Part shown: positions 33,601-36,600 of the stretch, one piece after another
Layout of the letters: every line of letters begins with the position of its first letter
How positions within the stretch are numbered: position 1 is the first letter of the stretch
From: Saccostrea echinata
Lineage: Eukaryota
Assembly: GCF_033153115.1 (NCBI RefSeq)
Contig: NW_026889757.1
Coordinates: forward strand, 4,712,001 to 4,776,000
Reading direction: 5' to 3'
Length of the DNA stretch: 64,000 bases
Made by a program: the position numbers and the translations under genes
The notes under the pieces: generated by a model
Database searches by the model: none
Told to the model about the DNA's origin: nothing
What the model saw: the letters and a program-made list of their open reading frames with translations, nothing else

Positions 33601-36600
33601 GCATTGGTTTGAATTTTTTGGAAAAGATGATTAAGGACTTCTTGTGAATTTTTAGATTTGCTACTAAGTTTGATAAAATAAATAAAACAAGTACCCTAAA
33701 ATCATGAAAGTAAGCCAAGTTTACTGTCTCTGAATAACTCTTCATGATACATGTATGTAGATTTCCAAGTACCAATGACCCTTAAAGTTTTCAAAGGCTA
33801 GATTATAAGCAGTTTAATAATTTAAGATTAATTCAAGATTTATTACAAGTATGATTTTAATTTCCATTTCCTTTGAAAGAATGAAAATAATGGTACATAT
33901 AGCTTTAGCATGAAGATTTGAGTGATTGCAATTCAGAAGCAACAGATCGTAAAGACAAATTATTTTGATTAAACAGGCAATGTGCACAACCCATAATAAC
34001 AGTATTGGTCAATGAGCAACACAAACCTGATGATCTGCAATTTTAAATACTTTGCATAGCATAGGTAACAAATATGCTTACTACTGAGTGCTTTGGAGTT
34101 TTTTTCTCCTTCATTTTTTTTATAAATTTGTTTAAGATATCCCTGACATTTTCATCTCAATTCAATGTGAAGGATTTCAATGTAATATTTATCAATATTA
34201 ATCTGTATATTCATAAATTAATAATATACAAGTAAACTCAAGTAATTTTTCTAAATGTCAATGACTTAAAATTCATTTCAATTTTAAAATAGTTCTGAAT
34301 GTACATTTGTGCTGAAATATGCAGGTACTGATTTTGTGGCTAACTTCCTAACAGTAGCCTTGTGTCTCACTTTCAAAAATATTCATCATTTCTGGCTTAT
34401 TTTCAAAATTTTAGGGTATATGAGAATTATATGAAGTACCTTAACCCTTTCAGAACAAACTCTGACTTCAGACAATTGCTTGACTAGCTGAGCCATGTGG
34501 TTTAAAACTGGTTTTAATTTGCTGTTAATAGCTACCAGAACAAAAGCCTAAAAGAAAAGAGAATATAGTGGAATGAAGATTTTCTAAAACATTATTCCAA
34601 AAGGGTTCCTGTCACTGGGTTCCTCAGCCTGCCAGCAGCCAGTTTTGGTTGTCAAGGCACAAGCTCCCCTCACTCACAATTCTGTATTTCACATTTAAAA
34701 ATTAATATATTTGTCTTAAAAAATCAAGGAACCTTTTCAACTAATTAATTTTCTTTTTTGCAGAAGATTTAGAAATGATACAGAAATTCATATCTATTAT
34801 TGAAACACCTCCTATATAATTTAATATAGGATATTTCTACTTTTAGACACAATACAGATTGCAGAATGAAGTTGAGCTATGCACCTGGACATGTGAAGTT
34901 AAATCTTAAAGTTACTGATCCTGTTTTTACCTTGCACCTCTTGGTGGATACATAAACATCAGCTAAAGCCTTGACAGCATAAGGAATGACTCCCAGAGAG
35001 AATCGCATAGCATTAAACACTGCTATCATAGTAAAGGCCTAAAACATTCACATGTTGTCAAAACATTAAACCTTAATAAATTAATAATATTAATAATAAA
35101 ACAAACTGAAAAAATTAAAACTTTTGTGTACATACATGAACATATATAAACAATTAAATCTATGTCTATATACATACAAACCCTCAAACTTATATCAAGT
35201 GAAGAAATATACATTATACATGTAAAATCATAACAAAAGGCCCATCGGCCTTGACAGTCACCTGATTTTATATTTAACATTTCAACACACTGAGACTTCT
35301 GAGTGACCTAGGAGTCATATGCAAACTCTTTTTGCTGCTACAAAAATATTGCTGAATCATACATTTTATAATTTTCTTTCTTTTTAAATAGAAAACTTCT
35401 TGTTCTCTTTTTTAAAATATGTAAAAATTTTATTAGAAGGGATGGGGTTGGGTTTGGGTGGTAAGTATAATTATATTGGGCAACTGGTATGATGTATCAA
35501 GATTTTTTTTCATTATAATGATACAAACAGCTTGCCTGCTAGACATAGAGAGAAGATGGGATTTTGTCATTTTTCTTTTGGGGGGAGGGGATACAAATAT
35601 AACGCATATTAACATTTCCAACCTATCCCTATCCCGGGGCCAAAACCCTGTACCTTTGGGTAAAGAATTTCAAGTTCTGGTAGAGGGCTTAATGCTCATC
35701 ACAATTAGGCAAAATGTCAAAATCTCTGCCTGCTATATATCATGGCATAAAGAAGATTTTTCAAAGATATAACATATTTCAAATGTATGGCTAATCTAGC
35801 CTTTCACATGAGCGGGGAGGAGGATGAACTCTGCATTAAGTTTAAAAAAGTTTAAGAATAACACAGGACAAATAAAAACAGATACGATATGTCATCTGAG
35901 TGACATAAGTTACACAAAAATCTTTATATGTACAGGTATTCCTAATACATATTTTCCTTGTGCCTACCTGTGCTGCAGAGAGGGGATTCCCTGTCATGAC
36001 ATGGGCTGTGATGACAAACACAGAGGCCATGACAGGAACCATTGGGGCCACTGAGGTACTGATACTGTTTACATATGCTGCTTTCTCCAGGACCTTTCGC
36101 TCCTGTCTTCTGATACCTAGGGATTCCAATTTACATATTAATAAAAGTTAAAGATCTAACTTTAACTTTAAAATAAAATACATGTATATAAAATTTAATA
36201 CAGTTTCTATAATCATTGTAGAGAGGGTCATTCTTGAATTCCCACTACACTGACTGCATGTAATTCATATAAACAATAAAGGTCCATGAATCCTTTAAAT
36301 GTGTTGCAGCCTATGATACAAAATATAAGCACTGTCAATATCCATTGCTCATTGATCCTAAATAGGTTTTTTACTAAATACAATAACTGAGAGAGTCACA
36401 AACATTATTGTGACATGTACATAACAGATACTTTCTACTGAATGCAGTAAAAATCTCAGACATAAAACTTAATAAAAACTCTTTCACATTCAATGAATAA
36501 TAAATGGGTACTCTTCTTATCACTTTTTTAGTCAACATGTATTGAAACTTTGATAAAAATAAACATCTCATAAGGTCATTGAACTCAACTTGTCCATATA

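What the first reader, a model, noticed from the sequence alone, without database searches (positions are those of the whole stretch)
34440..35038. Duplicated, putatively mutually exclusive TM6 exon in an ABCC5/MRP5-like transporter: a possible splicing switch for substrate specificity
Seen: two tandem exons, both exactly 108 nt, phase 0/0, open, with AG/GT ends, separated by 383 nt. A = [36 protein letters not shown]; B = [36 protein letters not shown]. They align without gaps and share the helix ends (AF, VK.L.[DE]V.V, R.K) but differ strongly in the membrane core, where B has Lys, Lys, Pro, Asn, His and Gln and lacks the FN motif. Known: this helix corresponds to the cavity-lining TM6 of MRP4/CFTR and TM11 of MRP1, a substrate-specificity determinant. 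Mutually exclusive exon clusters are described for Drosophila MRP (CG6214) and C. elegans mrp-1, but I know of none for TM6 in ABCC5-type genes. Inference: one gene makes two transporters with different binding pockets, B being more cationic. An intact length, frame and splice sites despite low similarity suggests purifying selection. Both exons are too short to appear in the ORF track.
Basis: partly seen in the sequence, partly recalled or inferred. Interest (0 to 1): 0.88.

Follow-up and report, generated by a model that had tools for sequence, protein, structure and literature searches.

The report
Alternative pore-helix exon in oyster ABCC5
An oyster export-pump gene of the ABCC5 type carries a spare, diverged copy of the exon for one cavity-lining membrane helix. 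Related oysters, scallops and mussels are modelled as using the same spare exon in place of the normal one, so the gene very probably makes two pumps with different binding pockets, which is real but not unprecedented.

Summary
On the minus strand, A (35038-34931) and B (34547-34440) are both 108 nt, open, phase 0/0, AG/GT-bounded and 383 nt apart. B lies in intron 11 of the Saccostrea echinata ABCC5-like gene, whose only RefSeq protein uses A.

B is not chance: a profile built only from other species' versions of this exon scores it at E=2e-18.

Relatives support the either/or reading. RefSeq isoform pairs of equal length in Crassostrea virginica and Magallana gigas differ only in these 36 residues, and X2 carries B's orthologue (69-78% identical). 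Argopecten has three versions and Mytilus five. B-type exons form one clade, so the duplication predates the split of oysters, scallops and mussels.

B-type helices always carry more positive charge. They also lose aromatics at positions 13 and 20; position 20 matches a pocket residue of human MRP5.

Not shown:
- any transport difference
- how exclusivity is enforced; an exon 10/intron pairing is only a candidate

Amphioxus and Lingula duplicated this exon independently.

This is a new member of a known kind (fly and worm MRP exon clusters).

The parts
15608..46548 (-). ABCC5-like gene (XP_061171411.1, P0001, 1416 aa), 31 coding exons
   Evidence: Exact walk of P0001 along the window. Name and species. 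Pfam PF00664 and PF00005.
35968..36116 (-). Constitutive exon 10 (end of TM5 and the loop before TM6); its donor serves A or B
36003..36046 (-). Candidate docking segment inside exon 10, complementary to the intronic island upstream of B
   Evidence: RNAduplex -49.2 kcal/mol, 35 pairs, reciprocal best partners in the 31-kb pre-mRNA. A hypothesis only.
34931..35038 (-). Exon 11 = version A of the TM6 exon (residues 407-442 of P0001), the canonical form
   Evidence: Best PDB matches are human ABCC5 residues 433-467.
34548..34930 (-). 383-nt intron between A and B, with a long-range hairpin (34892-34850 pairing with 34689-34649)
   Evidence: -44.6 kcal/mol. (MFE -87.4, z=-2.15, 1 of 100 shuffles as good).
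34596..34640 (-). GC-rich island 49-93 nt upstream of B's acceptor; candidate selector element
   Evidence: Single copy in the genome. No Rfam match.
34440..34547 (-). Version B of the TM6 exon, not annotated in this species; orthologue of the exon used by oyster isoform X2
   Evidence: Unique in the 923-Mb genome.
32085..34439 (-). Intron from B to exon 12 (2355 nt); holds a 26-nt inverted repeat (34418-34393 with 33717-33692) that starts 22 nt after B's donor
   Evidence: 88% complementary. (-32.9 kcal/mol). No other genomic copy found.
31940..32084 (-). Constitutive exon 12 (linker from TM6 to NBD1); its acceptor serves A or B

Best explanation
B is a functional alternative exon, the product of an ancient tandem duplication of the exon for transmembrane helix 6 of an ABCC5-type exporter. 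Exon 10 is spliced either to A or to B, and the chosen exon is then spliced to exon 12. This gives two full-length pumps that differ only in 36 residues of a cavity-lining helix. A is the canonical form and apparently the major one. B makes the helix more polar and more positively charged, and removes two aromatic side chains at positions that line the binding pocket in human relatives, so it probably shifts substrate preference. Shown here: the anatomy, the homology, the conservation, and equal-length isoform pairs in relatives. Inferred: use of B in this species, the change in substrates, and the way the choice is made. For the choice, my best guess is base pairing between exon 10 and a GC-rich island just upstream of B, which would loop A out.
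For: Anatomy: same length, phase and splice signals. Homology: tblastn E=0.014 in the window; cross-species profile E=2e-18. Orthology and use: C. virginica X1/X2 (1422 aa) differ at 23 positions, all within 412-444. M. gigas X1/X2 (1419 aa) differ at 25-26 positions, all within 411-443. Argopecten X1/X2/X3 and Mytilus isoforms behave likewise. B is 28/36 and 27/36 identical to the M. gigas and C. virginica X2 exons, against 85% for the whole protein. The B-type clade has 92/83 support and the oyster B clade 99/99. Helix chemistry: net charge over positions 1-23 is +3/+4 in all eight B-type exons and +2 in all eleven A-type exons. Phe at position 13 and the mostly aromatic, always uncharged residue at position 20 are replaced in all B types. 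Position 20 aligns with human MRP5 Phe452, and positions 16 and 23 with Lys448 and Lys455, which are TM6 pocket residues (alignment; PMC11156954). Composition: B has 38% GC against 29-32% in its introns.
Against: No RNA evidence for this species. The RefSeq annotations of S. echinata and Ostrea edulis list only the A form. All eight Logan-derived M. gigas proteins that cover this exon carry A, so B is at best a minor or restricted isoform. I could not check what evidence lies behind the RefSeq X2 models. The 383-nt intron is too long for steric exclusion, and 108 nt is a multiple of three, so neither steric hindrance nor nonsense-mediated decay would remove A+B or exon-skipped products. Amphioxus models include exactly such forms. 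The RNA pairing has no cross-species test, and its margin is small in one direction (-49.2 against -46.6).
Confidence: 0.8

Rival explanations
1. B is a relic in this lineage. It was once an alternative exon, as in Crassostrea, but is no longer spliced in Saccostrea and has not yet decayed.
For: Only the A isoform is annotated in S. echinata and O. edulis. B evolves faster than A: 69-78% identity against 97-100% among oysters.
Against: No stop, no indel, and both splice sites intact, with a strong pyrimidine tract. It scores 62.8 bits over its full length against a profile of other species' exons. Its GC content is above that of the introns. A missing isoform in one automatic annotation is weak evidence.
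Confidence: 0.08
2. B is an ordinary cassette exon rather than a strict alternative to A. It is sometimes included together with A, or both are skipped, giving mostly non-functional products.
For: All combinations stay in frame (108 = 3 x 36). RefSeq models for a Branchiostoma gene with an independent duplicate of this exon include A-only, B-only, both and neither. The Pinctada and Lingula gene models contain both copies in tandem.
Against: In all four bivalve genera with annotated isoforms, the forms that carry a variant exon have the same length as the A form. A second copy of TM6 would invert the topology of everything downstream, so such a product could hardly work as a transporter (inference). 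The Pinctada record is named 'hypothetical protein' and is not a RefSeq model, so it may be over-inclusive.
Confidence: 0.1
3. The resemblance of B to A is chance in an AT-rich intron.
For: Only 31% amino-acid identity. No PDB match for B even at E<=10.
Against: E=2e-18 against an independent profile. Orthologues exist in seven other isoform models. The length, phase and splice sites coincide exactly.
Confidence: 0.01

Closest known systems
RefSeq isoforms X1/X2 of the orthologous gene in Magallana gigas (e.g. XP_011455987 / XP_034328680, XP_019917902) and Crassostrea virginica (XP_078312460 / XP_078312464, XP_022286886)
   Same: Same gene, same exon and same two versions. X2 carries the orthologue of B in place of A at unchanged protein length.
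   Different: These are automatic models in other species. The S. echinata and O. edulis annotations lack the B form. I found no publication describing the event.
Drosophila melanogaster MRP (CG6214) variable exon clusters
   Same: Tandemly duplicated, mutually exclusive exons in an ABCC transporter, with intronic RNA pairings reported to guide the choice (PMC6071210, citing Yue et al. 2017 and Grailles et al. 2003).
   Different: CG6214 is a long, ABCC1-like MRP (PMC2680897), with up to 8 variants. I could not establish which helix its clusters encode. This is an arthropod gene, not a mollusc gene.
Caenorhabditis elegans mrp-1 exons 13A-D
   Same: Four homologous exons of equal length that is a multiple of three (156 nt), separated by introns of 154-435 nt, and experimentally mutually exclusive (PMC4165533). 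The geometry is the same as here.
   Different: A different ABCC subfamily, with exons of a different length, and an independent duplication. Its position relative to TM6/TM11 was not checked here.
Human ABCC5/MRP5 TM6 (residues 433-468; PDB 8WI0 and others)
   Same: Exon A aligns to it over 35 residues. Lys448, Phe452 and Lys455 of this helix line the pocket (PMC11156954).
   Different: Vertebrate sequences recovered here show a single version of the exon.
Independent duplicates of the same exon in Branchiostoma and Lingula ABCC5-like genes
   Same: The same 36-codon exon is duplicated in tandem.
   Different: Each copy groups with its own species' canonical exon and lies outside the bivalve B clade. 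Amphioxus models are not strictly exclusive. In Lingula the variant lies upstream of the canonical copy.

Membership tests
ABCC5/MRP5-type (short MRP) ABC transporter | Two ABC membrane domains and two nucleotide-binding domains in one chain | tested here: met
   P0001 carries PF00664 and PF00005 (precomputed). The window encodes all 1416 residues in 31 exons.
ABCC5/MRP5-type (short MRP) ABC transporter | Closest characterised relative is ABCC5 rather than another ABCC member | tested here: met
   For exon A the six best PDB matches are all human ABCC5 (E about 1e-3); ABCC2 and MRP1 follow at E about 0.03. Source names of all close homologues say ABCC5 or MRP5. No whole-protein phylogeny was made.
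ABCC5/MRP5-type (short MRP) ABC transporter | No extra N-terminal membrane domain (TMD0) | tested here: met
   TM6 lies at residues 407-442. This compares with 433-467 in human ABCC5 and with 582-616 in MRP1, which has TMD0.
Mutually exclusive exons from tandem exon duplication | Neighbouring exons on the same strand, with the same length and reading phase | tested here: met
   Both are 108 nt, phase 0/0, and 383 nt apart.
Mutually exclusive exons from tandem exon duplication | Sequence homology between the copies | tested here: met
Mutually exclusive exons from tandem exon duplication | Usable splice sites on every copy | tested here: met
   AG/GT at both copies. B has a long pyrimidine tract and an AAG|GTA donor.
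Mutually exclusive exons from tandem exon duplication | Exactly one copy present in mature mRNA | not testable with these tools
By proxy, equal-length isoform pairs in four bivalve genera differ only in this exon.
Mutually exclusive exons from tandem exon duplication | A known enforcing mechanism (steric hindrance, incompatible spliceosomes, or frame-dependent decay) | tested here: not met
   The intron is 383 nt, all sites are GT-AG of the ordinary type, and the length is a multiple of three. This leaves RNA structure or protein factors.
RNA-pairing-guided exon choice (docking site / selector type) | Complementary elements placed so that pairing brings one variant to the constitutive splice site | tested here: inconclusive
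   Exon 10 (36046-36003) pairs with 34640-34596 at -49.2 kcal/mol. They are reciprocal best partners in the pre-mRNA, and 4 of 1000 shuffles match the energy. No equivalent strong selector was found for A (best -30.2).
RNA-pairing-guided exon choice (docking site / selector type) | Conservation or compensatory change of the pairing across species | not testable with these tools

The most novel reading that the evidence does not exclude
Pteriomorph bivalves keep an ancient cassette array of two to five interchangeable TM6 exons in their ABCC5-type exporter. The array acts as a built-in switch of the substrate pocket, from an aromatic, +2 helix to a polar, +3/+4 helix. The choice is steered by pairing between the upstream constitutive exon and an intronic island. 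The same exon was duplicated again, independently, in amphioxus and a brachiopod, which marks this helix as a hot spot for convergent isoform evolution in transporters.
Probability: 0.3. Interest if true: 0.7.

Novelty: new member of a known kind. Interest (0 to 1): 0.5.

Why it matters
The physiological substrates of ABCC5 are still debated (the abstract of PMC12470876, calls it an orphan transporter). A natural pair of isoforms, identical except for one cavity-lining helix and kept across bivalve orders that I believe split hundreds of millions of years ago (from memory, not tested), is a ready-made experiment on which residues set specificity in short MRPs. It may also bear on how filter-feeding bivalves handle toxins or signalling nucleotides. 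On the practical side, the RefSeq annotations of S. echinata and O. edulis miss an isoform that sister species have. Recurrence of the same exon duplication in three phyla adds a case to the evidence for convergent exon-cluster evolution in MRP genes.

Tried and rejected

This ruled out dN/dS and a conservation test of the intronic elements.

Solved structures: B finds nothing in the PDB even at E<=10.

More copies:
- B has no second copy in the 923-Mb genome.
- No third variant exists in the window.

Transposon origin: the 26-nt inverted repeat after B and the A-B intron elements have no other genomic copies at this search's sensitivity.

Known RNA families: no Rfam match in 32000-36120.

More B-type relatives: a region search with the C. 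virginica X2 protein brought no further B-type cluster representatives, because isoforms are hidden inside 90% clusters.

It was redone from references.

Unavailable paper: Yue et al. 2017 (RNA Biol 14:1399), the key paper on MRP exon clusters across phyla, is not held. I could not check whether it already covers bivalve ABCC5-type genes.

Full report
OBSERVATION. On the minus strand, window 35038-34931 (A) and 34547-34440 (B) each read as 36 open codons. Each is preceded by AG and followed by GT, and they are separated by 383 nt.

GENE CONTEXT. A 58-residue neighbouring exon found a 1416-aa protein that is 100% identical over that exon (P0001). Its sources name it XP_061171411.1, ATP-binding cassette sub-family C member 5-like, Saccostrea echinata, and it is the only member of its cluster. 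Walking P0001 along the window reproduces it exactly as 31 coding exons between 46548 and 15608.
- A is exon 11 (residues 407-442).
- Exon 10 ends at 35968 and exon 12 begins at 32084, both in phase 0.
- B lies inside the 2846-nt intron 11 and is not annotated.
- A aligns over 35 residues with human ABCC5 433-467, then with ABCC2 579-613 and MRP1 582-616. The human MRP5 structure paper assigns Lys448, Phe452 and Lys455 to TM6 (PMC11156954).

MORE THAN CHANCE.
- A and B align end to end without gaps: 11/36 identities and 22/36 positives.
- B is the best non-self match of A in six frames of the whole window (E=0.014).
- At the DNA level 49/108 bases agree. Second codon positions are kept best (22/36 against 14 and 13), which is the pattern of coding constraint, although the difference is not significant on its own.
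- The strongest test is a profile built from 25 versions of this exon in other species, leaving out both window exons. It scores B at 62.8 bits (E=2e-18) over all 36 positions and A at 80.5 bits. Nothing else in the window reaches E<0.6. This species therefore has exactly two versions.
- B is unique in the 923-Mb genome.
- Its GC content (38%) is above that of its introns (29-32%) and within the range of the gene's exons (32-54%).

RELATIVES USE IT AS AN EITHER/OR EXON. A region search with P0001 returned the C. virginica protein P0156. It has the orthologue of B where A should be. Opening the clusters and extracting the segment gave the following.
- C. virginica: X1 carries A and X2 carries B. 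Both are 1422 aa, in two annotation releases.
- M. gigas: X1 carries A and X2 carries B. Both are 1419 aa, in two releases.
- Argopecten irradians: X1, X2 and X3 carry three versions, each 1255 aa.
- Mytilus edulis, M. galloprovincialis and M. trossulus carry up to five versions.
- Within each species the equal-length isoforms differ only inside the 36-residue window. For example, the C. virginica pair has 23 differences, all in 412-444, and the M. gigas pair has 25-26, all in 411-443.
- From my own knowledge, and not checked here, the NCBI pipeline creates extra isoforms only on transcript evidence. If so, these are expressed forms.
- All eight M. gigas proteins from Logan assemblies that cover this exon carry A, so A is the major form.

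AGE AND CONSTRAINT.
- B of S. echinata shares 28/36 and 25/36 residues with the two M. gigas versions, 27/36 with C. virginica, 18/36 with the second copy in the Pinctada model, and 16-18/36 with Argopecten X3 and Mytilus X4.
- A is 35-36/36 identical among oysters. The whole proteins are about 85% identical.
- B therefore evolves faster than A and somewhat faster than the protein average, but far slower than an unconstrained intron would.
- In a tree of the 36-residue segments (few columns, so only the main splits count), all B-type exons of oysters, Pinctada, Argopecten (X2, X3) and Mytilus (X4) form one group (92/83). The oyster and Pinctada B exons form a starred clade inside it (99/99).
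- Two further Mytilus versions pair with each other inside the A-type group. A third (M. edulis X4) branches at the base of that group.
- The A/B duplication thus predates the split of oysters, scallops and mussels.
- Listed isoforms of Mercenaria, Mya, Dreissena, Haliotis and sea urchins show only the A type. This may mean loss, later origin, or missing annotation.

INDEPENDENT REPEATS OF THE SAME EVENT.
- The Lingula model has two tandem copies that group with each other.
- One Branchiostoma gene has a second copy that falls in the A-type group, outside the bivalve B clade.
- For that amphioxus gene RefSeq lists A-only, B-only, both (+36 aa) and neither (-36 aa). Exclusivity is therefore not automatic for this exon geometry.

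WHAT CHANGES IN THE PROTEIN. Over exon positions 1-23, all eleven A-type exons sampled have net charge +2 and 3-4 aromatic residues. All eight B-type exons have +3 or +4 and 1-2 aromatics, with lower hydropathy.
- Kept in both types: Ala1, Phe2, a basic residue at 12 (Thr in the shark A-type exon sampled), a basic residue at 23 (human Lys455), an acidic residue at 27, and Arg34. Lys36 is invariant in B-type and Lys or Gln in A-type.
- Switched consistently: position 13 is Phe in A and never aromatic in B. Position 17 is Ile/Val in A and His/Asn/Gln in B. Position 20 is Tyr/Phe/Cys/Ile in A and Gly/Lys/Gln/Arg in B.
- Often switched: position 8 (Phe/Leu to Asn/His) and position 10 (Ala/Ser to Lys).
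- Position 20 corresponds to human Phe452. The MRP5 paper describes its ring as moving between the inhibited and apo states and as helping to close the pocket.
- From memory, not tested here, positions 9, 12 and 13 correspond to MRP1 Asn590, Arg593 and Phe594, which are known specificity determinants.
- The inference of a more cationic, less aromatic pocket is reasonable but untested.

HOW THE CHOICE MIGHT BE MADE. The usual automatic mechanisms do not apply. The intron is 383 nt, all sites are ordinary GT-AG, and 108 is a multiple of three. Scanning the pre-mRNA for duplexes gave two notable features.
- A GC-rich island at 34640-34596, 49-93 nt upstream of B's acceptor, pairs with 36046-36003 inside exon 10 (35 pairs, -49.2 kcal/mol). 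Exon 10 is the island's best partner in the whole 31-kb transcript (next best -36.9; mean -18.4, sd 6.0). Against exon 10, 4 of 1000 dinucleotide shuffles of the island do as well. In the reverse direction the island is the best partner of the exon 10 segment, but by only 2.6 kcal/mol. Such a stem would loop out A and bring exon 10's donor next to B's acceptor.
- The A-B intron folds into a long hairpin, 34892-34850 with 34689-34649 (-44.6 kcal/mol; whole-intron z=-2.15).
- Both elements are single-copy and match no Rfam family.
- Without orthologous DNA I cannot test conservation, so this remains a hypothesis, at perhaps 15-20%.

LIMITS.
- Use of B in S. echinata itself, tissue pattern, co-inclusion rate, dN/dS and RNA covariation therefore all remain open.

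COMPARISON WITH WHAT IS KNOWN.
- Tandem-duplicated, mutually exclusive exons in ABCC genes are established. Drosophila MRP has 8 variants in one cluster, guided by RNA pairing (PMC6071210). C. elegans mrp-1 exons 13A-D are 156 nt each, with introns of 154-435 nt (PMC4165533). Both are reviewed alongside human ABCC9 in PMC9741552.
- PMC6071210 summarises Yue et al. 2017 as finding independent exon duplications in metazoan MRP genes across phyla. I could not read that paper.
- CG6214 is a long, ABCC1-like MRP (PMC2680897), whereas the gene here is of the ABCC5 type.
- Full-text searches combining ABCC5, bivalve or Crassostrea with mutually exclusive exons found no description of this event.
- It is nevertheless present in RefSeq as unnamed X1/X2 models.
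- The scan's own notes hold other candidate exon pairs in this genome, but none for this gene.

VERDICT. It is a genuine, ancient, conserved alternative TM6 exon that is unannotated in this species. As a kind of thing it is known, and as an instance it appears undescribed in the literature. Interest is moderate (0.5): a useful natural experiment on ABCC5 specificity and a tidy case of recurrent exon duplication, but not a new principle.

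Noticed in passing
window 22725-26775: Intron 20 of the same gene is 4051 nt long, with strong negative GC skew. 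Its minus-strand ORFs repeat a peptide unit that resembles the end of exon 20.
   Followed up: partly
window 35788-35850 and 33028-33255: C-rich stretches in the intron before A are complementary to a G-run element and a neighbouring stretch in the intron after B (-43.0 and -37.6 kcal/mol). A further C-rich copy lies at 35579-35613. These could be inverted repeat elements flanking both variant exons. Pairing between them would loop out A and B together.
   Followed up: partly
window 34391-34423 and 33687-33719: A 26-nt inverted repeat, 88% complementary, begins 22 nt after B's donor and closes a loop of about 675 nt in the downstream intron. No other copy of the 727-bp unit was found in the genome, so it is not an obvious MITE.
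   Followed up: partly
P0194 versus P0195 (Magallana gigas isoform X2 in two RefSeq releases): The two releases give B exons that differ at 5 of 36 residues, while A is identical. This means either unusually high polymorphism in B or two B-type exons in that species.
   Followed up: no
P0208, P0309, P0312, P0313, P0316, P0318 (Branchiostoma): One amphioxus ABCC5-like gene has an independent duplicate of the same exon. Its RefSeq isoforms carry the first copy, the second, both or neither.
   Followed up: partly
P0153 (Pinctada imbricata), P0252 and P0217 (Lingula anatina and a MetaClust entry with the same two copies): These gene models contain both exon copies in tandem, which is probably over-inclusive prediction. 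In Lingula the diverged copy comes first.
   Followed up: no
P0152 (Ostrea edulis) and P0001 (S. echinata): Both RefSeq annotations list only the A form, although Crassostrea and Magallana have X2. The B isoform is probably missing from these annotations.
   Followed up: no
P0169, P0171 (Crassostrea virginica): A second, very similar ABCC5-like protein in C. virginica has an A-type exon with two substitutions. It may be a recent paralogue. No paralogue lies in this window.
   Followed up: no
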